Shown in pieces: positions 2,010 through 52,272 of a stretch of 64,000 bases of DNA; positions within the stretch are counted from its first letter, which is position 1, and each line of letters opens with the position of its first letter. Location of the stretch: IMG/VR virus record IMGVR_UViG_3300026512_000002, positions 1-64,000 of that record. The stretch is one strand, 5' to 3'. The notes under the pieces are model-generated. The model worked only from the letters and a program-made list of their open reading frames with translations, was not told the origin of the DNA and ran no database searches. Made by a program: the position numbers and the translations under genes.

Positions 2010-3227
2010 CTATAATAATAACATGTTATTATATATTTTTTTTATAATATATATAATTATCATAATATTATACAATCCTTTATAATCATCATCAAATTCT
2101 AACATTTCTAATTCATCAATTATGTTGTTTTTATCAATATTATTATTTATATATTTAATAATAAAATCTTCAAACATATGTATATTATCAGCATATAATA
2201 TATTATTCTGAATATTATTTATTAAAGCACTGTCATATAAGACATATGGATTACTGCCTAGGTTACCATAATATGATGTAATCATATTATCTTCATGATC
2301 CCAATTTAATCTATTTTTTTTAGTATTAAATAAACTCATAAAGTTAACATATTGTATATTAGAACCATTTTTATTTTCTATTGCCCAATATAGTGTTTTA
2401 TCATATAGTTTGGTATAAAATAATCTATGATCCTCTTTACCGATATCTATTCTATCTAAGTAAATAGCATTATAAATATCTTTTATTTTTAATGGAATTA
2501 AAATGTTATTATTATTGGTAAATATGTTTAACATTGGGTCATATATCTTACGATTACTACTATCTGTAAAGTATATATAATTTAAGTCTTTATGATATAA
2601 GTAATCTGTTACAAATAGTAATAAATCCATATGAGTATTTACTAAACTATCTATTAAAATCCTATCATTCTCAGCAATAACTGGATTGTGTCCTGTGCCT
2701 ATATTATCATAATCTACTGTAAATTCTTTAGTAGATTTTCTATCTAATAATTCTTCAACTGTTCTATGATCTAATATAAAGCTTATACTGTAAAATTTAG
2801 CACCAGTTATTTTATCTGATTTAACATCAGTGACTTGGAATAAATGATGTTCATTATCATAATTTATTGTAAAAAAATCTTCTGGATAAGGATCTATTAA
2901 ATGTGGTATTATTATACCATTACCTTCTACAGAAGTGTCAGATCCAAAATCAGTATCTTCAACATTGACACTATCAATACCTTGAAATTGATATATTGGT
3001 AAATCATTAATTATATCAAATCTAATAGATGAATCTTTACCTAATAAACCAATTGTAGAATCTAATGAGCTTTCTATTGTCGATTGTTTAAAATTTTGAT
3101 GATAATATGTAACAAATGTTGGTTTATCTGTAAAATATATGGAATAATCCATAGTTGCCATATGTTGTCTTTTATTAATATTATCATTGAATATGGTCTG
3201 TTCTTTTTTAAGTGATATCTTAGCCAT
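2010..3227 (-). CDS. Jumbo-phage virion structural protein (AR9/phiKZ-like family)
   Basis: 405-aa ORF; pattern G-x-IIP..I.PYPEDFF.I....LFQVT is recalled from AR9-like virion proteins; late promoter motif upstream. Confidence 0.55.
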   Translation of the reverse strand: MAKISLKKEQTIFNDNINKRQHMATMDYSIYFTDKPTFVTYYHQNFKQSTIESSLDSTIGLLGKDSSIRFDIINDLPIYQFQGIDSVNVEDTDFGSDTSVEGNGIIIPHLIDPYPEDFFTINYDNEHHLFQVTDVKSDKITGAKFYSISFILDHRTVEELLDRKSTKEFTVDYDNIGTGHNPVIAENDRILIDSLVNTHMDLLLFVTDYLYHKDLNYIYFTDSSNRKIYDPMLNIFTNNNNILIPLKIKDIYNAIYLDRIDIGKEDHRLFYTKLYDKTLYWAIENKNGSNIQYVNFMSLFNTKKNRLNWDHEDNMITSYYGNLGSNPYVLYDSALINNIQNNILYADNIHMFEDFIIKYINNNIDKNNIIDELEMLEFDDDYKGLYNIMIIIYIIKKIYNNMLLL

Positions 3228-4034: not shown

Positions 4035-7000
4035 ATGGTAAGAGAAAAAGTTCGTGGATTAAAAAGGCGTGAAATTCGAGATATTAAACTTTATATTTTA
4101 GCTAAAAAGATTAGTATTGATAAATTATCAAAACTGGTTAATATAAGCAAATATAGATTATCCAAATGTCTTAAATATGGAAACAACAAATTTACAATGT
4201 ATGAAATTTCCAATATTAAAAAAATTATTAATGATAATAACAATGAACAAATGAAAAGTGTGGAATTAAATAATAGTGATTTTTTTAAACAAAATATATC
4301 TGAAGAAATATGGAGAAGTAAATATAAAGCGGTTAAAGATAAAACAGTATTTGATACATTTGATAGGATTATCGGAACATTGTTTGACAATACTGATGAG
4401 TTTGATATAGTTATCGCATCAAAATTACGCAATATGATGCATGAGAACAGATTTTTACCTGCTGGCAGAATATTATCCAATACTGGTGATGACACTAAAC
4501 CTATTGCTAGTTTAATAAATTGTCTTGTTATGGAACAAATACCTGATTCTATGAATGGTATAATGAGTATTGCTAGAGAAGCTGCTTTAAGTCTTCAAAG
4601 AGGAAATGGTGTCGGTTATGACTTTTCATCGATAAGGCCTAAAGGTGCTTATGTAGCTGGTGTTGGTGCGGATACTAGTGGACCATTACCATTTATGGAA
4701 ATATTTAACACTATGGCTAAAACTATAATGTCTGCTGGTGGCAGAAGATCTGCTCAGATGGGAGTTATGGATATACATCATCCCGATATTGTAGATTTTA
4801 TTACATCTAAACAAAAAGAGGGTGTTCTGAAACAATTCAATTTATCTGTCAATATAACTAATGATTTTATGAACCAATTAAAATTATTCCAAAAAACTGG
4901 TGATAAAAAATATGAGTTATGGGAATTGTGGTTTTGGGTTAAATTATCACCAACAGATACTGTTCATAGAAGTAGAGTTAGTGTTATTAATAAAGGTGAA
5001 TTACCATATGATCTTAAACATAGAGATAATAATTATTTTGTATTTGATAAAACTCATATCGAAGTAAAATATGGTAATTGTTCTCATAATACTATTTATG
5101 AGAAAAAAGTTTTTAATATTATTAGAATTACAGAATTATGGGATATTATAATGCGTTCTACTTATGATTATGCTGAGCCTGGAGTATTGTTTTTAGATAG
5201 AGCAAATGAATATAATCTGCTAAAGAATTATGAAAATATTAGAGCTACAAATCCATGTGTTGTTGGGGATACGAAAGTTGCTGTTGTCAATAGAGGGGCT
5301 GTTACTATAAAAGAGCTTGCTGATAAAGGTGAGGATGTTATGGTATATGCATATGATAATGATCTTAACAGAAGAGTTGTTAAAAGAATGAGAAGGCCTA
5401 GATTAACTGGTGAAAATATTGGCGTGTATAAAATATTATTTAATTCTGGAGATAGTATAATAGTTACAGGTAATCATGAAATTTTAATGAGTAATGGTGG
5501 TTATGTTGAAGCTAAAGATTTAGAACGTGGTAGTAGCGTCCATGTGTCACAGATTAATTTTGATAAAACGTCTCATATCGAGTTTAATCCCAATGATTAT
5601 GATATTAAAGTCACTAGAGTTGATGATGAGGATGTTTCGTTTATAGAACGTACTTGTGAGCATTGTGGTAAAAGTTTCTGGGTGAGATATGACGAAAGAG
5701 AAAAAGCATTCTGTTCTGGTAAATGTTCCGATAGTTATACTGAAATTAAAAATGGTTGGAGGAACAATGTTAAATCTAGAGTAGATTATCAAAACATGGG
5801 TACCATGTTCGAATATTTGGTTGTTGATATAGAGTATGTTGGTACTAGAAATGTGTATAATGGTACTGTTGATGATGTTCATAATTTTTATGTTGTATTA
5901 GATGATAGTGATCCTAATAATGTTACTATGCTGAATAATATGCAGTGTGGTGAGCAAATATTACCATTTAATGGTGCTTGTTTATTGGGATCCATGAACC
6001 TTGTTAAGTATATTGATGGTGATAGTTTTAATTTTGCTAATTTTTATAATGATACTATTTTTGCTAATATTTTATTAGATAGGGTGGTTGAACGACATGG
6101 GTTAGCATTAACAGGACAAATTGCTGAAATAACTAGTAAACGAAGGCATGGTTTAGGTTTTACTGGATTAGGATCTATGTTCCATATACTAGGTATTGAT
6201 TATGGCAGTATTGAATCAATAGAAATGACTAGAAATATAAGTATGATTTTAGCATATGGTAGTTTAGTTGCTAATGCTAAGTTATCCAAGATTTCAGGAT
6301 CTTTTAAAATTGATAATATGAATAATTTTATTGAAGAATTTAATAATAGTAAATATTATACTCATCTTATAGATAATATTAAGAGTAGTGGGTTTGGTGA
6401 TCATATTATGAATGTTGATACGTTATTAAATATGGTCAATACATATGGTTTGAGATATTCACATGCTACATCAATAGCGCCTACTGGGACTATAAGTTTG
6501 GTTAGTAATAATGTTTCTAATGGTATAGAACCACCGTTTGCATCAGCATATAGTAGAAATGTTGTTGACGCAAACGATACTAGTATAAGTAAAACTGAAC
6601 GAATTATGGATTATGCATTTATGATGGCTTGGGAAAAATCCAACATGGATTATGATGAATTTCTTAAAGAATATAATATGAGTCATAAATTTGCTCAAGA
6701 TATATCACCTAGTGATCATATTGCTATTCAGGCTGCTGCTCAAGAATTTATTGATTCAAGTATTAGTAAGACTATAAACTGTCCCACTAATATGAAATTT
6801 GAGGATTTTAAAAATATATATTTGGAAGCATATGATAATAATTTGAAAGGTCTGACAACATTTAGGTTTAATCCTGAAGTTAGATCTGCTGTATTAATAA
6901 CAGATGACGATATGATGAATATGAATATAAAGATTATGTTTAAAGATGGTTCTAGTAAAATATATAAAGCTAGTGATCAAGTGGAATATAAAGGAAGAGT

Positions 7001-7037
7001 TGTGACAGCATATAATTTATACGATATGTATAAATAA
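4035..7037 (+). CDS. nrdJ: Adenosylcobalamin-dependent (class II) ribonucleotide reductase, intein-containing, with N-terminal HTH-like extension
   Basis: Motifs FLPAGRIL, SLINC, GxGVGYDFS, RRSAQM, FNLSV, AEPGVLF, ATNP[intein]CGEQ, ACLLGS, SIAPTGTISL, ISKTIN; followed by an NrdJb-type gene. Confidence 0.93.
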   Translation: MVREKVRGLKRREIRDIKLYILAKKISIDKLSKLVNISKYRLSKCLKYGNNKFTMYEISNIKKIINDNNNEQMKSVELNNSDFFKQNISEEIWRSKYKAVKDKTVFDTFDRIIGTLFDNTDEFDIVIASKLRNMMHENRFLPAGRILSNTGDDTKPIASLINCLVMEQIPDSMNGIMSIAREAALSLQRGNGVGYDFSSIRPKGAYVAGVGADTSGPLPFMEIFNTMAKTIMSAGGRRSAQMGVMDIHHPDIVDFITSKQKEGVLKQFNLSVNITNDFMNQLKLFQKTGDKKYELWELWFWVKLSPTDTVHRSRVSVINKGELPYDLKHRDNNYFVFDKTHIEVKYGNCSHNTIYEKKVFNIIRITELWDIIMRSTYDYAEPGVLFLDRANEYNLLKNYENIRATNPCVVGDTKVAVVNRGAVTIKELADKGEDVMVYAYDNDLNRRVVKRMRRPRLTGENIGVYKILFNSGDSIIVTGNHEILMSNGGYVEAKDLERGSSVHVSQINFDKTSHIEFNPNDYDIKVTRVDDEDVSFIERTCEHCGKSFWVRYDEREKAFCSGKCSDSYTEIKNGWRNNVKSRVDYQNMGTMFEYLVVDIEYVGTRNVYNGTVDDVHNFYVVLDDSDPNNVTMLNNMQCGEQILPFNGACLLGSMNLVKYIDGDSFNFANFYNDTIFANILLDRVVERHGLALTGQIAEITSKRRHGLGFTGLGSMFHILGIDYGSIESIEMTRNISMILAYGSLVANAKLSKISGSFKIDNMNNFIEEFNNSKYYTHLIDNIKSSGFGDHIMNVDTLLNMVNTYGLRYSHATSIAPTGTISLVSNNVSNGIEPPFASAYSRNVVDANDTSISKTERIMDYAFMMAWEKSNMDYDEFLKEYNMSHKFAQDISPSDHIAIQAAAQEFIDSSISKTINCPTNMKFEDFKNIYLEAYDNNLKGLTTFRFNPEVRSAVLITDDDMMNMNIKIMFKDGSSKIYKASDQVEYKGRVVTAYNLYDMYK
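5256..5945 (+). mobile_element. Mini-intein (230 aa) at the NP|CGE catalytic site of NrdJ
   Basis: Starts CVVGDT (block A), has VTGNH (block B) and VYNGTVDDVHNF (block F), ends ...NNMQ before Cys+1. No LAGLIDADG/HNH domain visible. Confidence 0.9.
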
Positions 7038-12692: not shown

Positions 12693-12822
12693 ATTAAAAA
12701 AAAAGAAAATAAAATATATTTTATTAAGGATTATTTAATAGTTAACTTATATTATGTGTACATATTATCATGTTGTATAATATGTACACATTTTATTAAA
12801 TAGAAATATTTGGAGGTTAATT

Positions 12823-13725
12823 ATGACTAATTTAAATCAAAACACATATTCTCGTAAATTAGATCTGTTAAGTATTTTCAACATATGGTACACCCATATA
12901 TTGAAAAACGAAGATGATGTTGATCGTAATTATAGCGTTGATACTTACTGGTCCGATGATTCGGAAGATCTGTTATATAATAAATATAAACATAATATGG
13001 TGTTTTTTATGGAAAGGATGTTAACTGATATTGATTTTGTTGAGATTATTGTTAATGTTTTTAAATTATATGATATAACGTTAAATAATGTAACATTCTA
13101 TTCACCTAATGAGTATAATTATAAAACAGATACTATTATAGTGTCTGTTGAAATGGAAAAAGATATTTATAATAAACCACTTGTGCTTAATGGCGATATG
13201 CGTGAATATGTGCAATATTATATTGATAATATACGTGTAGGTTCTAGGGATGGATATATATCAGTAGAACCATCTGTTGTATCGGATGTTGTTAGAGATG
13301 ATTATGTATATATGTATGCTATTGGTAAAGTTATTTATAACACTTATGGTGATAGGTTTAGAGCTTTAATGGATACTATATATGAACATATGTTATATAT
13401 TAGATCAATTTGCATGTGTTATTGTGAAGATGCGAAAACCGATATATTGTTATCTAATGACGAGTTATTAAGTTCTGATTATGATAAGGAGTATGTTGTT
13501 AGTATATTAAAAGATTGTTCTACTATCAACGACTTTAATGAAGATGGTGACATTATTACATACATAGATATATTTGATGTGAAAACCATGTCTGATGGTA
13601 TATTAGTAGAAGTAGAAGTACATGGTCATAGGATAGATGATGATTATATAACAATGCTTATAATGTCTAGCTTATCAACATTTTGTAAGACTGTTAACCT
13701 ACCTAGTAATCTATCAATAAGGTAA
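12823..13725 (+). CDS. Hypothetical phage protein (SPxEYNYxTD / SRDG motifs)
   Basis: SD GGAGG; early-type motif CATATTAT-N6-G upstream. Confidence 0.75.
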   Translation: MTNLNQNTYSRKLDLLSIFNIWYTHILKNEDDVDRNYSVDTYWSDDSEDLLYNKYKHNMVFFMERMLTDIDFVEIIVNVFKLYDITLNNVTFYSPNEYNYKTDTIIVSVEMEKDIYNKPLVLNGDMREYVQYYIDNIRVGSRDGYISVEPSVVSDVVRDDYVYMYAIGKVIYNTYGDRFRALMDTIYEHMLYIRSICMCYCEDAKTDILLSNDELLSSDYDKEYVVSILKDCSTINDFNEDGDIITYIDIFDVKTMSDGILVEVEVHGHRIDDDYITMLIMSSLSTFCKTVNLPSNLSIR

Positions 13726-13765
13726 AATCGTAATATTGATGATCATAAATATATATTATAATAAT

Positions 13766-14112
13766 AAGTTATTTAATAATGAATCGTGCATTGGCAAGTG
13801 TTTCCGGCGGTTCATAGCATAGAATGCTACTTATAGGAAACAACACACATTTGTGTGTTCCATTGTAAAGTTGTAGCTCTGGTAGGAAGGAGCAGTGAGC
13901 GGACATTGTGTGTCGAAACATGTCGCGGCTCTTGGTAGAAATACCAGCGGTAATCAATCCGTCAGAACACGTAAACATGGCTGACTACCATGATTGCTGG
14001 AGTTGCTATCCTAAAAGCAACTCTTGAGTAAATATATACAACCCTATCTGCGTTTGCGATAGGGTTGTATATCATTAAGAAAAGAGGTTGATCCCCTCTT
14101 TTCTTTTTTTTT
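13766..14112 (+). ncRNA. Putative structured early ncRNA (~350 nt)
   Basis: TATATTAT at 13752; GC-enriched; helices include a perfect 15-bp stem 14034-14048/14058-14072; terminator AAGAAAAGAGG/CCTCTTTTCTT plus T-tract. Confidence 0.65.
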
Positions 14113-14219
14113 GATTATGGACGACATATGTTGAAATCATTTTCAATTATATATTATAGTAATAGTTAATGTGTTTATCATACAATATGGTATGATATAA
14201 TATTTATATTGGAGGAAAT

Positions 14220-14924
14220 ATGCGACAAGAAGTAGAATTAACATTAGAAGATGGTACAGTATATGGTACCTTTTCGTATGAAAAAAAATTGGACATTAGC
14301 GATGATAATATGTTCAATAATGTGAAAATTGGATCAATAACCGTATTATACGGTTATGATTTAATACCAACGAAAATACCTACATATACAATACCTATAT
14401 GTAAGGCAAACTCCAAACATTTTAATGATGAACTATTGGGGTTTAGAGAACAACTTAAGAAAAAGTTGGAAACGTGTGTCTATTATTCAGCCAAATTTGT
14501 ATTTACAACATTTGAGGATCTACAAGTTGGATATATGTGTGGAACAGCCAGTTATGATGTTGATCATGCAAATCAAGTGTTATCGTATACAGAAAATTGG
14601 ACTCATGGTGAGTTTTTAGAAAAATGCGGCGATGACAGTATACAGATGTACGCGCCAAGATCAAATTGGGGTATGGTTATACGTTATCCATCAACATCTT
14701 GTGATAAATATAGTAGTAAAAGATATGTGTTATTTGAAGCTATTGGCTTTATAACAGGTCTAGATAAGAAAGACTATGAATTAAAATGGCATATCGCAAC
14801 TAATATATTTACACTATCATCACCTACCTCTAAAAAAGGTAGGTTGATAGGAAAACGTGGAAGAACGATTATGAAAATCGAACATGTTGCTAAATATCTA
14901 AATGTTAAAATAATACTTAGATAA
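14220..14924 (+). CDS. Protein with C-terminal KH (RNA-binding) domain
   Basis: KGRLIGKRGRTIMKI GxxG-loop KH signature; SD GGAGG; TATATTAT at 14150. Confidence 0.7.
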   Translation: MRQEVELTLEDGTVYGTFSYEKKLDISDDNMFNNVKIGSITVLYGYDLIPTKIPTYTIPICKANSKHFNDELLGFREQLKKKLETCVYYSAKFVFTTFEDLQVGYMCGTASYDVDHANQVLSYTENWTHGEFLEKCGDDSIQMYAPRSNWGMVIRYPSTSCDKYSSKRYVLFEAIGFITGLDKKDYELKWHIATNIFTLSSPTSKKGRLIGKRGRTIMKIEHVAKYLNVKIILR

Positions 14925-14931
14925 TTATAAC

Positions 14932-14958
14932 TATGGGATCGAAAGATCCCATTTTTTT
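14932..14958 (+). terminator. Intrinsic terminator, copy 1 of a 27-bp direct repeat
   Basis: TATGGGATC-GAAA-GATCCCATTTTTTT, identical to 17665-17691. Confidence 0.85.
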
Positions 14959-14970
14959 TAAAGAGGACAA

Positions 14971-16476
14971 ATGAAATTATACGAAGAATTACAACGAATA
15001 GAGAATCGGGTAAATTTTACAGAACACGATATAGACCCAGTATGGGTTAATTTTATTAGGAAGTCATTTGGTGACAAATATGAAATTAAAACTGATTATA
15101 AAAGTGATGGGTTTTTATTTGATGTTGAGCGTGATATGTATATTGTTATTATGGAATTTAAACGTGATAAATTATTAGGTAAAAATAATATTGATTTAAA
15201 CGAAGTAATAGTTCAAGTTATTTATTATTTAAAGAAAGTTGAGAAGGATGGTAAAATTTTACCGAAGGTTGTTTTAATTGGAGATGTTAACGAAGTTGTT
15301 ATTTTTCCAACATATACAATCGAAAAATATTTGAGAATGGAGAATGTTGATTGGAATATCGCAGCTAGTGAAGCATATAAAAGTAATCGCGATATGTTGG
15401 ATATGTTAAAGGACGATGTACATGTTAAGTTTAAAGTTGAAAACGTGGATGTTTCTTTTAACGAGGAAAAATTCATCAATAATTTAAAAAGAATGGTTTA
15501 TGATTCGTTTTCTAAAATAAAGATTACTAAAATTAATATTGGAGAAGTATTTGTGAATCATATTAAAGGGTTGTTTGTTGACGCGAATGACTCGACTATA
15601 TTCAATTTCTTGCAGATAATGAAAGGTAATTATGCTCTTGCGATTAAGAAAAGGAATAAAAGTAAATATGTATTATATATAGAAGATGGTAATGTTGTTC
15701 AAGTGAATAGGGATAAATATGCTATATTGGAGAATACGTTTGAGCTCAATATGAGTAATCGTGAGTTTAAAGAAATGTTGCGAAATAAGGACGAGTTCGA
15801 AGATAGTGTTAAAAGAGTGAAAGAAGGGATTTTCTATACACCGTTACCGTTTGTGGATTTAGCACATCAATATATTGAAAAGGAATTTGGTAAAAATTGG
15901 AAAAGCGAATATTCTGTATATGATCCTGCGTGGGGAATGGGGAACTTAACTAGGGATTATGTATTTGATGACTTATATTGTTCAACATTGGATGGGGACG
16001 ACTTAAAATTAGCGAAGAATTTCAACAAGGGATCTAGGAAATTCCAGATGGACTTTTTGAACGATGATTTGCCAGAATTTATGGTGGAAGCTTTTAAAGA
16101 TAAAAGTAAGAAGTGGATTGTGTTTATGAATCCGCCGTATAAAAATGGTCCGTCTGGAATAAATCATAATAATGGAGTTGGATTTAATGTTAGTAAAACT
16201 AGTAATAAATTAGATATGAAAAAAGATGGAGTTAATGGTAATGACTTATATGTTCAATTTATATATAAAGCTATTAAGTTAAGATCCGAATATGGTGCAG
16301 ATCTAACCATATGCGTTTTTAGTAAAGCAACATATTTGAATGGTAAAGAAGGGAAAGGTTTAAGAAAATATTTAAGAAATAACAATGTTGAGTTTAAATG
16401 TGGATTTTTAGTAACTGGAAAGGTATTCAAGGGACTTGATGCTAAATGGCCAGTTAGTTTTACAATTTTAAAATAA
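14971..16476 (+). CDS. Type IIG-like fused PD-(D/E)xK endonuclease / N6-adenine DNA methyltransferase
   Basis: N-terminal SDG..(x12)..EFK..QVIYY; GIFYTP (motif X), YDPAWGMGNL (motif I), DFL, NPPY (motif IV), DLYVQF. Confidence 0.85.
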   Translation: MKLYEELQRIENRVNFTEHDIDPVWVNFIRKSFGDKYEIKTDYKSDGFLFDVERDMYIVIMEFKRDKLLGKNNIDLNEVIVQVIYYLKKVEKDGKILPKVVLIGDVNEVVIFPTYTIEKYLRMENVDWNIAASEAYKSNRDMLDMLKDDVHVKFKVENVDVSFNEEKFINNLKRMVYDSFSKIKITKINIGEVFVNHIKGLFVDANDSTIFNFLQIMKGNYALAIKKRNKSKYVLYIEDGNVVQVNRDKYAILENTFELNMSNREFKEMLRNKDEFEDSVKRVKEGIFYTPLPFVDLAHQYIEKEFGKNWKSEYSVYDPAWGMGNLTRDYVFDDLYCSTLDGDDLKLAKNFNKGSRKFQMDFLNDDLPEFMVEAFKDKSKKWIVFMNPPYKNGPSGINHNNGVGFNVSKTSNKLDMKKDGVNGNDLYVQFIYKAIKLRSEYGADLTICVFSKATYLNGKEGKGLRKYLRNNNVEFKCGFLVTGKVFKGLDAKWPVSFTILK

Positions 16477-16636
16477 TAGGAGTGATAAAATGAACATACT
16501 AGTTGAGTAAATTAATATATGTAGCGATGATATTAAAATGGGTATATTTGTAAATAATGATAACTATACTGAATTGTTGACTAATAAACATTGTATAAGG
16601 TTAACAATACATCAGTGGTTAGTAATAGGAGAAATA

Positions 16637-17659
16637 ATGGATAATTTTAATAACTTTAAATTTGATGTTTATGATGTAGATGCAAAATTAATTGGGGATG
16701 TTATATTGTATAATATGGATGATGAAATCTCACTAACAGATTGGTTGAAAGATGTTAGAAGTGAAAACAAAACAACTAAAGGGTTATGTGTTAAATCACC
16801 ATTGAGAACATCATATAGTGAACGAGGAACCATGGTAGATAAAGCATTAGGATATTTATTAAATGCTGGAAATAACATGGAGAAATCAGCTAGAAGTGTT
16901 GGTTTGATGAGTATAGCATTTTCCAATGCACATGGAGAATCTATTGAATCTACTAACCTTAAGCGAGCATTTTTAACTATGGCTTTCCGTAGAAGCTATG
17001 CAAAACATCAATGGTTTGAAGAGAAGAAGGAATTTATCGCACCAACTTTCAAGTCCAAACAACATCAACAACAAGTTTATACCGATGCTATCATCTTTTC
17101 CATTTTCAACAACCAAAACCAAACAGGTTCGCTCCGCGACATCAAATACGACAATAAAACCTTTCAAGTGGAAAACCACTTCTTTCCTTTTAGCAAGAAA
17201 ATAGTTCAATCTTTAATAGATTTATATATTGATGAAGATGATAGGTTTGACCTAATAGAAGAAGATATGAATCGCTATGGTCGTAAAGATAGAATCATGA
17301 ATAGAATAATCGAAAGATATTTGCGTTCCGATTCATTTAGTGAAGAAGCGTTAGATGTTTACAATAAAGCATTGTCAATGTATAAGAATGCGTTTAAGTA
17401 TTTTGTAGATGAAGAATATCAAGAAAAGGATGTGAACGGAACATTATGTACAACTTATTTAAACGAAGTATGGGACACATCATGGTATCAGATGAAGATT
17501 GTTATAGAAAACCGATTTAAAGATGATTATAAGGAGTTTAAGAATCTCTATAATAAATTAGAGAAACGAATGAGGCAACATGTTATTGATTGTGGAGTTA
17601 TAATTCCTAATGAAGGTGAAAAATATTATGATTTTGAAACCAATATGGTGATTGAGTAA
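16637..17659 (+). CDS. Probable specificity/C-terminal half of the split Type IIG-like enzyme
   Basis: SD AGGAG before ATG 16637. Sequence continues the pattern expected after WPVSFTI (FDVYD..., DWL, NHFFPF, WD..WYQ). Confidence 0.6.
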   Translation: MDNFNNFKFDVYDVDAKLIGDVILYNMDDEISLTDWLKDVRSENKTTKGLCVKSPLRTSYSERGTMVDKALGYLLNAGNNMEKSARSVGLMSIAFSNAHGESIESTNLKRAFLTMAFRRSYAKHQWFEEKKEFIAPTFKSKQHQQQVYTDAIIFSIFNNQNQTGSLRDIKYDNKTFQVENHFFPFSKKIVQSLIDLYIDEDDRFDLIEEDMNRYGRKDRIMNRIIERYLRSDSFSEEALDVYNKALSMYKNAFKYFVDEEYQEKDVNGTLCTTYLNEVWDTSWYQMKIVIENRFKDDYKEFKNLYNKLEKRMRQHVIDCGVIIPNEGEKYYDFETNMVIE

Positions 17660-19293: not shown

Positions 19294-19342
19294 GGAGCTA
19301 ATAGTCAGGTTCCTATAATCGTATATATATGTATTACATATA

Positions 19343-19357
19343 TATATTATACTATTG
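19343..19357 (+). promoter_or_regulatory. Early (virion-RNAP-type) promoter YATATTAN-N6-G
   Basis: TATATTAT-actatt-G. The same motif with G at +7 occurs at 18315, 18842, 22395(-), 28699, 29516, ~43317, 51179 and ~62530. Confidence 0.65.
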
Positions 19358-20237
19358 TATGGCGGAAATATTTTACGAAACGTCAATACTATGGGAAAGC
19401 GTATCCCTAAAAAAAACAGGCCGCACTGGCGTACCAGGAACACCAAGTAGAGATCTTGGTCAACAAAAAAATCCGTTTGGCCAACGAAAATGATCCATGT
19501 TGTCTGGGAGTATTAGTATGCTCCATTGAAGGACAGTCTCTGGTGATAATGGCAAAAGGTCGAAAGGCCTGGAAAGAAGACGAAATTCGTAACAATGTCT
19601 AAGATAATGGCATTGGGGTATAAAGGGCGGTGGCCTGGAAGTCCTACGATATAAGTCTTTTTTACATAGGTGTATCTTTGATATATTTATGTAACGCTTT
19701 TTCCGTTCAAATGATGAGAAAAGCTATGCTTAATGGCGAAAGCCAAAAAGTAAGCTTTAAGATCATCAATATTGATCGGGTGAAGCAACTCCTACATAAT
19801 AATGATTGGACAAGTGCCATTGGGCACGAAGATGTCGCAATCATTGTTTCTAAAGAATTGGGAATGGAGGTTAAACATAACCGAATTTCCCATTCTTTAG
19901 AAAAGGAGGATGTCTTGATTTTAAGGCAGTATTTCGGAGGGCGTTTGCCCGAAGGAACTACTACCTTAAATGAAGATCAGCTCAAGTTATTGAGCTGGGT
20001 AGAAATTACTCTTAGCAAGTAATTTCTATTTATCCTTCTAAGCTAACAGTTTAATTCGGTTTGACTAACCGAAGTATATTGTTAGTAGGAGTGGAAACAA
20101 AAAAACCTAATAGGTCGGCCAGGTAGGAATGGCCGTTGACTAGACATAGTCTTAAAGAGAGTTAGTCACTCTCAATATTCCGATCCATCAAAAAAAAACA
20201 CCACCCGTTCTGGGTGGTGTTACTAATCCTTTTTTTT
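19357..20237 (+). other. Highly structured early transcript enclosing acrIII-1 (~320-nt 5' and ~200-nt 3' folded regions)
   Basis: Early promoter, continuous helices, 5'/3' end pairing (19359-19372 with 20174-20188), terminator AACACCACCC/GGGTGGTGTT. Confidence 0.7.
19678..20022 (+). CDS. acrIII-1: AcrIII-1 viral ring nuclease (DUF1874; degrades cA4, anti-type III CRISPR)
   Basis: MIYLCNAFSVQM, SAIGH (catalytic His), NRI, LEKED and GGRLPEG match the SIRV1 gp29/STIV B116 family; TTG start after AGGTG. Confidence 0.9.
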   Translation: MIYLCNAFSVQMMRKAMLNGESQKVSFKIINIDRVKQLLHNNDWTSAIGHEDVAIIVSKELGMEVKHNRISHSLEKEDVLILRQYFGGRLPEGTTTLNEDQLKLLSWVEITLSK

Positions 20238-51109: not shown

Positions 51110-51192
51110 AATATACTCCTTTATGAAATTTATAATATTGTCATTGTTATTGTTAAGTATATAGAATTATTTTAAATATATATTAATTAAAT

Positions 51193-52259
51193 GTTGGATA
51201 TTAGTAATGTTCATAGATTTCTCTATGAAGCATTATCTAGGCGATGTATGCTGCAGAGGGTGAAACCTCTTACGCTATCAATGTCGTTGAACATGATGTG
51301 GATAAGGAATTTATCATAACACAAAGTATCTGACCGTCAAGGAAATGACGTTAACACCCGCTAGGATAGCGTAAAGCCTATGGCTGTAAACGGTAACTGC
51401 CGCAGCAAGTCAGACCTAGTTGGTTATTGGCGTAACATATTCATCGAATATATTTGAATATGTTTATAGTTAGACACACATGAAGTGTGTATTATTGATA
51501 TGAAGACATCCCCATGTTTCCACAAATGGTGAGGTGTGTATACTTGAGATAATATGTATGGAATGGAATATGTTGAGTTATGTTTTGCTTGATATGTTCA
51601 TGTGTTAAACTATGAATATGTTCGTATATAGTATGAATATTGTTATTAGAAGGACAACTATAAACCCGTTCACGGTTGTAACGTGTAATCGTTCTACTTA
51701 TGTTTTGGTAGATACGAAGGTGTGAGAAAAGTAGGATATAAACTACTTCACCAACTCCAGATAATAATGGGGGGACATGCGGTCTTAAAACGTATCGGTT
51801 ATTTCAAATAACCGGGTTGGTAACCTAAAACCTGGCTAGCCGAAGCCAATGTATAAATGAAACTATCATATATTGTGTTATGATAGTGGATTATGGTAGG
51901 ATTGGGCACCCTTGAGTATTTTCGGATACTCTTAATTGTCTATGGTCATAAAAACAGGTCGAACATGCGACATGACCATGATGCTCTAACAAAGCATCAA
52001 GGCGGTTTTCATAACGCCATGTTTTATCCTCAGAAAATCGAGGGGACGGTGGTCCTTAAACATTTGACCAAGTCATTGGTCAAAGTATAAGTGAAGTTGT
52101 TGCTGGCGAGTAATGATTGATCAAATGGCAGGATTGGACATCCTTGAGTATTTTCGGATACTCTTAATTGTCTATGGTATGGGGTGCTAGTCAGGAGTAT
52201 TTGACTAACCATGGTGTTTCGCAAAACATCAAGACAATATGTCGAGCCCCCTTTTTTTT
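51193..52259 (+). ncRNA. Very large structured early ncRNA (~1.07 kb) with a duplicated 54-nt module
   Basis: TATATTAA-N6-G (51179-51193); no convincing ORF; GAAA and UUCG hairpins; repeat 51893-51946 vs 52125-52178; GGGG..CCCC plus T-tract end. Confidence 0.75.
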
Positions 52260-52272
52260 GTATTTACTACTA

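What the first reader, a model, noticed from the sequence alone, without database searches (positions are those of the whole stretch)
13766..14112. ~350-nt early structured RNA directly upstream of a KH-domain gene
Seen: own promoter and terminator; stems AACACA/TGTGTT, CCAGCGGT..ATCA/TGATTGCTGG, GAGTTGCT/AGCAACTC and a 15-bp perfect stem; 5' TAATGA can pair with 3' TCATTA. The next gene (14220-14924) ends in a KH GxxG motif. Inference: a possible RNA-protein pair.
Basis: partly seen in the sequence, partly recalled or inferred. Interest (0 to 1): 0.6.

Follow-up and report, generated by a model that had tools for sequence, protein, structure and literature searches.

The report
Orphan early structured RNA in jumbo phage
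A giant phage from a hydrothermal vent appears to carry a separate ~350-base gene for a folded, non-coding RNA with its own early promoter and terminator, but nothing like it or its neighbouring genes exists in any database, so the proposed partnership with the next-door RNA-binding-like protein stays an untested guess.

Summary
Window 13766-14112 is a 43-47% GC island in a 28% GC genome. It has no credible ORF. It folds far better than shuffles: z -7.4 for the whole stretch and -3.0 for the 262-nt core. It ends in a 15-bp hairpin followed by a strong intrinsic terminator.

The genome is a 228-kb vent-metagenome phage distantly related to Bacillus phage AR9/PBS1, and it encodes its own multisubunit RNA polymerases. 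The experimentally defined AR9 early (virion-polymerase) promoter motif sits exactly at 13747-13759. I therefore read the stretch as an independently transcribed early non-coding RNA.

It matches no Rfam family. It has no paralogue and no homologue in 11 related phage records or in the pattern scans.

The neighbouring 234-aa protein has a KH-like GxxG core only at sub-threshold scores. That protein and the upstream ORF are singletons among billions of proteins. Co-occurrence of RNA and protein therefore cannot be tested, and the pairing rests on adjacency and a similar promoter motif alone.

In passing: a second, ~1-kb GC-rich non-coding stretch (about 51193-52262) has the same promoter type and two duplicated modules.

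The parts
13747..13759 (+). Early-promoter motif, an exact copy of the AR9 virion-RNAP early consensus 13-mer. The predicted +1 lies 6 nt downstream at A13766.
   Evidence: The consensus AAATATATATTAT-(6N)-G+1 comes from PMC5312081. There are 8 exact copies in the genome against 0.8-1.5 expected, and all 8 have a purine at +1. In the window, copies with up to 1 mismatch number 13 against 5.8 +/- 2.1 expected.
13766..14112 (+). Predicted primary transcript, about 347 nt, non-coding and GC-rich.
   Evidence: GC island. MFE -119.1 kcal/mol, z -7.4. The + strand folds 10 kcal/mol better than the - strand. The ORFs inside have GC3 of 0.40-0.50 against 0.196 +/- 0.063 for genes. Those ORFs have no Pfam hit.
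13769..14031 (+). Folded core: a closing helix 13769-13776/14024-14031 around eight hairpins. They span 13779-13815, 13816-13828, 13829-13871, 13876-13893, 13897-13931, 13932-13947 (GAAA tetraloop), 13948-13999 and 14000-14023.
   Evidence: Helix list with pair probabilities, mostly 0.83-1.0; the 13829-13871 arm is weak. The core alone gives z -3.0. This is a prediction from one sequence with no covariation.
14034..14072 (+). Perfect 15-bp (plus 2) hairpin with no T tail. I read it as a 3' protective or processing hairpin.
   Evidence: It is one of 33 perfect hairpins of 12 bp or more in the genome, mostly intergenic. It may therefore be a generic punctuation element rather than something specific to this RNA.
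14077..14112 (+). Intrinsic terminator: an 11-bp stem, a 7-nt loop and a T run.
14145..14157 (+). Early-promoter-like motif with one mismatch (AATTATATATTAT) before the KH-like gene. The predicted +1 is A14164.
   Evidence: Caveat: in AR9, a change at this same third position left a predicted promoter silent.
14220..14924 (+). 234-aa orphan protein with a GGAGG ribosome-binding site and a C-terminal KH-like core. The core spans aa 194-225 (nt 14799-14894), and the GxxG motif is G211-G214 (nt 14850-14861).
   Evidence: Sub-threshold KH hits in Pfam, KH-only hits against PDB sequences and KH/Era leads from the Atlas structure search at low TM. There is no relative in 5.8 bn or 1.84 bn proteins. 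The AF2 model is unusable, pLDDT 30.
14933..14952 (+). Terminator after the KH-like gene.
12823..13725 (+). Upstream 300-aa orphan ORF. No terminator lies between its stop codon and the RNA.

Best explanation
This is a stand-alone gene for a stable, structured, non-coding RNA of a distant AR9/PBS1-type jumbo phage.

Shown by sequence:
- An exact AR9-type early promoter lies at 13747-13759.
- The predicted +1 at 13766 lies 3 nt before the first base of the closing helix.
- A GC-rich multi-hairpin core of about 260 nt follows.
- Two tandem 3' hairpins come next, and the second is an intrinsic terminator.

Inferred:
- The RNA is made in the first minutes of infection by the injected virion RNA polymerase.
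- It ends at the terminator.
- It is shielded from 3' exonucleases by the two hairpins.
- It acts through its fold, displaying purine-rich loops and a GNRA tetraloop as a platform or decoy for a protein, rather than by antisense pairing.

The cheapest candidate partner is the neighbouring KH-like protein, which has a similar promoter motif. I put that specific pairing at only about 0.15. The stated confidence is for 'a real, separately transcribed early non-coding RNA', not for the partner or the function.
For: - Structure and composition: GC island. Fold z -7.4 for the whole stretch and -3.0 for the core. The + strand is favoured by 10 kcal/mol and by the polarity of the T run.
- No coding signal: the largest ORF is 69 aa, GC3 is more than 3 sd above that of genes, and there are no Pfam hits.
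- Kinship with AR9/PBS1: a structural protein is 31% identical to the AR9/PBS1 virion protein. RNAP beta-like and two beta'-like genes are present.
- Promoter: the exact AR9 early motif is enriched 5- to 10-fold in the genome, with a purine at +1 in all exact copies.
- Terminator: a strong intrinsic terminator.
- Independence of the next gene: it has its own promoter-like motif, a ribosome-binding site and an in-frame stop 25 nt upstream of its ATG.
- Same design elsewhere: another GC-rich non-coding stretch in the same genome, starting at 51193, has the same promoter type.
- Precedent: the relative phiR1-37 has an RNA-seq-detected intergenic sRNA of 297 nt (PMC4848604).
Against: - There is only one sequence, so there is no covariation and no evidence of conservation.
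- There are no expression data. No RNA run holds the phage.
- The core z-score is moderate. GC-regressed MFE does not single out the core window.
- GC-rich, strongly folding stretches in this genome can be coding, for example at 108.9 kb.
- No terminator separates the upstream ORF from the RNA, so it could also be read as that gene's 3' UTR.
- The +1 base is A, not the G of AR9.
Confidence: 0.55

Rival explanations
1. Structured 3' UTR or punctuation region of the upstream 300-aa gene. The hairpins stabilise or terminate that mRNA and the stretch has no separate function.
For: There is no terminator between the stop at 13725 and 14077. Long perfect hairpins are a general intergenic feature of this genome, with 33 of them. 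A similar 15-bp hairpin lies upstream of ORF300 at 12754-12791.
Against: An exact early-promoter motif sits between the stop codon and the structure. A 260-nt GC-rich multi-hairpin core is far more than other gene ends in this genome carry.
Confidence: 0.15
2. GC-rich remnant of foreign or decayed DNA (a pseudogene or fragment of a mobile element) that folds well only because of its composition. No functional RNA.
For: It is a singleton with no homologue anywhere. The core z-score is only -3.
Against: There is no residual protein similarity in any frame. The promoter, the closing helix and the terminator are precisely juxtaposed. G-U pairs favour one strand.
Confidence: 0.1
3. Cis-acting leader (riboswitch or attenuator) that controls read-through of the terminator into the KH-like gene.
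For: The order is structure, then terminator, then gene, on one strand. AGGAAGGAG (13886-13894) could pair with the 3' arm of the terminator; this is my inspection, not a scored result.
Against: There is no riboswitch or T-box hit at E up to 10. A 15-bp perfect hairpin is interposed between the core and the terminator. 115 nt containing a promoter-like motif separate the terminator from the start codon.
Confidence: 0.07
4. An intron or intron remnant, as in AR9, where most GC-rich non-coding gaps are group I introns.
For: AR9 has 10 RF00028 matches in such gaps. Two annotated AR9 introns escape Rfam even at E up to 1, so the lack of a hit here is weak evidence.
Against: The upstream ORF ends in a stop at 13723-13725. 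The downstream frame has a stop at 14193-14195, and that gene has its own GGAGG and ATG. An internal promoter, an intrinsic terminator and about 100 nt of AT-rich tail do not fit an intron 3' end. No RF00028 or RF00029 signal appears at E up to 10.
Confidence: 0.05
5. It encodes a small protein.
For: There are ORFs of 69 aa (-), 39 aa (+) and 37 aa (-). An AAGGAG motif lies at 13887-13892.
Against: GC3 is 0.40-0.50 against 0.20 in genes. No family hits. AAGGAG lies only 2 nt from the nearest start codon. The longest ORF is on the strand without a promoter or terminator.
Confidence: 0.03

Closest known systems
Early transcription units of Bacillus phage AR9 (virion-RNAP promoters; PMC5312081)
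   Same: The identical 13-nt promoter element and a start 6 nt downstream. The phage is AT-rich (28% GC) and encodes its own multisubunit RNAPs.
   Different: AR9 early units drive protein genes, whereas this one drives an ORF-less GC-rich fold. The +1 base is A here and G in AR9. The phages share only about 31% identity in a virion protein.
phiR1-37 intergenic sRNA misc_4 (297 nt, seen by RNA-seq; PMC4848604)
   Same: An ORF-less transcript of about 300 nt between genes of a related jumbo phage. It is strongly folded, z -7.8.
   Different: misc_4 is AT-rich and built of a few long hairpins. It shows no sequence or model similarity. Its function is also unknown.
raiA motif RNA with KhpA/KhpB (PMC12968392)
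   Same: A structured RNA of about 200 nt that is bound by KH-domain proteins through an exposed single-stranded stretch. This is the nearest precedent for the proposed pairing.
   Different: raiA is a bacterial family and matches nothing here. KhpA/KhpB are general RNA binders and are not encoded next to raiA as a dedicated pair. The KH assignment here is sub-threshold.
GOLLD and ROOL large ornate RNAs, often phage-borne (PMC12286853)
   Same: Phage-associated, elaborately folded RNAs of unknown function with their own transcription signals.
   Different: They are 2-3 times longer, form conserved families and are often found beside tRNAs (from my knowledge). There is no Rfam match here, and this phage has no tRNA at all.

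Membership tests
Any Rfam 15 family (including RNase P, tmRNA, SRP, 6S, Y RNA, raiA, GOLLD/ROOL, riboswitches, T-box) | A covariance-model score at or above the family's gathering threshold. | tested here: not met
   No hits at gathering threshold in the whole window. At E up to 10 in 13600-14300, only hairpin or terminator noise appears at less than half of the gathering scores. ARAGORN finds no tRNA or tmRNA.
AR9-type early (virion RNAP) transcription unit | The consensus AAATATATATTAT followed by 6 nt and a purine start. | tested here: met
   An exact 13-mer at 13747-13759 with A at +1 (13766); AR9 has G.
AR9-type early (virion RNAP) transcription unit | The phage encodes phiKZ/AR9-type multisubunit RNA polymerases. 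| tested here: met
   A PF00562 match at 117930-119381 and PF00623 matches at 97692-98105 and 154140-154277. A virion protein is related to that of AR9/PBS1.
AR9-type early (virion RNAP) transcription unit | The transcript appears early and independently of protein synthesis. | not testable with these tools
   No RNA run holds this phage.
Group I intron | The catalytic core is recognised by RF00028. | tested here: inconclusive
   No hit at E up to 10. However, two annotated AR9 introns are also missed at E up to 1.
Group I intron | It interrupts a gene whose exons join in frame. | tested here: not met
   Stops lie at 13723-13725 and 14193-14195. The downstream gene has its own ribosome-binding site and ATG.
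KH domain (neighbouring protein) | A GxxG loop between two helices after a beta strand. | tested here: met
   G211-K-R-G214. The alignments to IMP1-3, FBP and KhpB KH domains cover beta1-alpha1-GxxG-alpha2.
KH domain (neighbouring protein) | A Pfam score above the gathering threshold. | tested here: not met
   KH_1 scores 18.5 against 21.5, KH_KhpA-B 18.5 against 32.1, and KH_2 16.7 against 22.
KH domain (neighbouring protein) | The KH fold. | tested here: inconclusive
   The AF2 single-sequence model has pLDDT 30. The Atlas structure neighbours are all KH or Era proteins, but at TM about 0.34 and from a model with pLDDT 0.45.
Dedicated RNA-protein pair (such as Rsr-Y RNA or IscB-omega RNA) | Co-occurrence of the RNA and the protein gene across genomes. 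| not testable with these tools
   The protein and the RNA are both singletons.

The most novel reading that the evidence does not exclude
The RNA and the adjacent KH-like protein form a dedicated phage-encoded ribonucleoprotein. It would be made from early promoters within minutes of infection and would act on a host machine or defence. It would be the first phage-borne structured RNA with its own KH partner. A second early RNA of about 1 kb in the same genome would suggest an RNA-based early programme in this vent branch of AR9-like phages.
Probability: 0.12. Interest if true: 0.7.

Novelty: new variant of a known kind. Interest (0 to 1): 0.42.

Why it matters
Jumbo phages that bring their own RNA polymerase are known to make a few unexplained non-coding transcripts, but none has an assigned fold or partner. 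This locus has a sharply defined unit: an experimentally anchored promoter type, a predicted 5' end that meets the fold, and a clean terminator. The RNA can therefore be synthesised and probed without culturing the phage. If the KH-like neighbour binds it, that would be a new kind of phage RNP. If not, it is still a defined candidate for a new structured RNA family. The practical limit is that the phage is uncultured and has no sequenced close relatives.

Tried and rejected
Searches for relatives of the neighbouring proteins, all blank:
- IMG/VR peptide scans with the KH protein, ORF300, a 1077-aa protein and the RNAP beta-like protein.
- tblastn of the KH protein and the 1077-aa protein against 50,697 phage records.
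- PHROGs, NCBIfam and PADLOC.
- Word search of 5.8 bn proteins for the KH protein and ORF300, which returned only the query itself.
- Full HMMER search of 1.84 bn representatives for the KH protein. It returned the query itself plus one 1675-aa protein matched in 14 stretches (best stretch query aa 49-88), which I did not examine and take for a repetitive or low-complexity match.

The methylase search gave about 2,300 hits, but the best 120 listed are only about 29-37% identical, too distant for synteny.

Searches for the RNA itself:
- blastn against phage records found nothing.
- Exact-pattern scans of IMG/VR found nothing.
- The first exact-pattern scan of genome contigs found nothing. The second went to a peptide scan with the RNR protein to find host-like genomes, also blank.
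- The JGI/ENA metagenome scan returned the source contig plus one 21-nt match inside a ParB-methylase ORF. I showed this to be chance: only 7 aa are shared.
- blastn and a single-sequence covariance model over 5 AR9-like phage records and 6 IMG/VR relatives found nothing, and the model finds only itself in its own genome. A one-sequence model is weak, so this blank says little.

Reads. One other vent metagenome (X2) holds fragments of a relative. One is an identical 216-nt piece over the 5' end of the KH gene (14200-14415). Two diverged pieces lie in the methylase gene (15753-15960 and 16090-16488). No listed piece covers the RNA.

Other tests:
- Pseudogene reading: no support.
- Antisense or target search against the 5' regions of all phage genes: nothing stands out, and the KH gene is average.
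- GC-regressed genome-wide MFE: uninformative, because few windows share this GC content.
- Single-sequence AF2 model of the KH protein: unusable.

Complex prediction was not used, because it does not take RNA.

Full report
**What the window is.** The window is the first 64 kb of a 227,696-bp IMG/VR virus record. The record's only full holder among public runs is a hydrothermal-vent metagenome. The genome has 27.9% GC and no tRNA or tmRNA gene. Its proteins are mostly orphans, but a virion structural protein (2010-3227, minus strand) is 31% identical over 80% of its length to the AR9/PBS1 virion protein. That protein also has weaker matches in phiR1-37, Listeria LPJP1 and the Staphylococcus MarsHill group. 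The genome encodes one RNAP beta-like and two beta'-like genes. It is therefore a distant member of the phiKZ/AR9-type jumbo phages that bring their own multisubunit RNA polymerases.

**The observation.**
- The stretch 13776-14100 is one of seven 200-nt islands above 42% GC in the genome.
- The 347-nt stretch folds at -119.1 kcal/mol against -83.4 +/- 4.8 for dinucleotide shuffles, z -7.4.
- Without the two 3' hairpins the 262-nt core still beats all 200 shuffles, z -3.0.
- The plus strand folds 10 kcal/mol better than the minus strand and uses about eleven G-U pairs.
- The T run lies on the plus strand.
- The ORFs inside the stretch are at most 69 aa. They have GC3 of 0.40-0.50 against 0.196 +/- 0.063 for genes and no family hit.

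**The promoter.** The AR9 transcriptome paper defines the early, virion-polymerase promoter as AAATATATATTAT-(6N)-G+1 (PMC5312081). That 13-mer occurs exactly at 13747-13759. The genome holds 8 exact copies against 0.8-1.5 expected under Markov orders 0-3. All eight have A or G at +1. In the window, copies with up to one mismatch number 13 against 5.8 +/- 2.1 in shuffles. One-mismatch copies precede the KH-like gene (14145), a second GC-rich non-coding stretch (51174) and a GC island at 19.4 kb (19338). This supports the word 'early', by analogy and not by measurement.

**The 3' end.** A perfect 15-bp hairpin (14034-14072) is followed by an 11-bp, T-tailed terminator (14077-14112). The genome has 33 perfect hairpins of 12 bp or more, mostly between genes. 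The first hairpin may therefore be a generic element of this phage.

**What it is not.**
- It matches no Rfam family at gathering threshold in the window or at E up to 10 locally.
- It has no paralogue.
- The intron reading needed care. In AR9, most GC-rich non-coding gaps are group I introns, with ten RF00028 hits. Two annotated AR9 introns are nevertheless invisible to Rfam.
- I reject an intron here on layout. The upstream ORF stops at 13723-13725. The downstream frame has a stop at 14193-14195. The downstream gene has GGAGG plus ATG and its own promoter-like motif.

**The neighbouring protein.** Its last 40 residues carry a beta1-alpha1-GKRG-alpha2-beta2 pattern. This pattern hits three KH Pfam families at E 0.002-0.007, all below their cut-offs. 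Among solved structures it hits only KH domains. Because the protein ends right after beta2, a type II KH topology is the only one that fits; this is inference. The fold could not be checked. The first 190 residues match nothing.

**The pairing.** The protein and the upstream ORF are unique among 5.8 billion clustered proteins. The KH protein is also unique among 1.84 billion representatives. No RNA homologue turned up in any search. The RNA shows no special complementarity to the KH gene's 5' region. What is left is adjacency and a shared promoter type. In AR9, a change at the same third position of the motif silenced a predicted promoter, so even co-expression is uncertain. The nearest precedent is raiA RNA bound by KhpA/KhpB (PMC12968392). 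The nearest relative with a comparable transcript is phiR1-37, whose 297-nt intergenic sRNA was seen by RNA-seq but is unlike this one.

**Verdict.** This is a well-delimited candidate gene for an early, structured, non-coding RNA and a new family of one member. My probabilities are:

| Reading | Probability |
|---|---|
| Real, separately transcribed non-coding RNA | about 0.55 |
| Partner is the KH-like protein | about 0.12-0.15 |
| Structured 3' UTR of the upstream gene | 0.15 |
| Compositional remnant | 0.10 |
| Cis-acting leader | 0.07 |
| Intron | 0.05 |
| Small protein | 0.03 |

Noticed in passing
window 51174-52262 (+): A second, larger candidate RNA. A one-mismatch early-promoter motif lies at 51174-51186 (+1 about G51193). 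About 1,050 nt of 35-43% GC sequence without a long ORF follows, lying between minus-strand genes and ending in a G/C run plus T8 at about 52245-52260. It holds two tandem modules that share a near-identical 48-nt block (51891-51940 and 52131-52180). In the alignment of the two modules, by my reading, a hairpin at matching positions has different but complementary arms (UGGCU/AGCCA against UGACCA/UGGUCA). Fold z is -5.0 for 51741-52262. There is no Rfam hit at E up to 1.
   Followed up: partly
window 19338-19650 (+): A GC island (43%) behind another one-mismatch early motif (19338, +1 G19357). The fold z is only -2.45. By my reading, a short ORF of about 45 aa could start 2 nt after the predicted +1, so it may be a leaderless small gene rather than an RNA.
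   Followed up: partly
window 14971-16476 and 16538-17659 (+): The 501-aa NPPY (Eco57I-type) methylase and the following 373-aa ORF together match the length of single-chain homologues of 807-815 aa. This looks like a split gene, or a gene that is fused elsewhere.
   Followed up: no
window 4035-7037 (+): A ribonucleotide reductase of 1,000 aa with an intein splicing domain inserted at residues 422-619.
   Followed up: no
whole genome G000: There is no tRNA or tmRNA gene in 228 kb, which is unusual for a jumbo phage; AR9 has one. There are no RF00028 group I introns in the first 64 kb, whereas AR9 has at least ten.
   Followed up: partly
G000 68253 and 69075 (+), outside the window: Two exact early motifs sit in identical 48-nt contexts about 820 nt apart, inside a cluster of very strongly folding windows at 69.8-73.3 kb. 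This looks like a repeated early unit.
   Followed up: no
L036:410-969 (AR9 NC_031039.1 207909-208468): An unannotated 560-nt gap between gp241 and gp242 of AR9 contains a GC island (record 208001-208200). The stretch L036:440-900 folds with z -4.3. There is no Rfam hit, and a tRNA gene lies 440 nt downstream. It is a possible unrecognised RNA in the reference phage.
   Followed up: partly
L034, L035 (AR9 63.7-64.3 kb and 35.5-36.3 kb): The annotated introns of the AR9 virion-RNAP subunit gene and topoisomerase gene are not detected by any Rfam intron model, even at E up to 1.
   Followed up: partly
window 15753-16488: A second vent metagenome from another study holds diverged contig pieces (about 85% and 92% identical) in the methylase gene, and an identical 216-nt piece at 14200-14415. 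A related strain therefore exists in nature, but in low-depth pieces only.
   Followed up: partly
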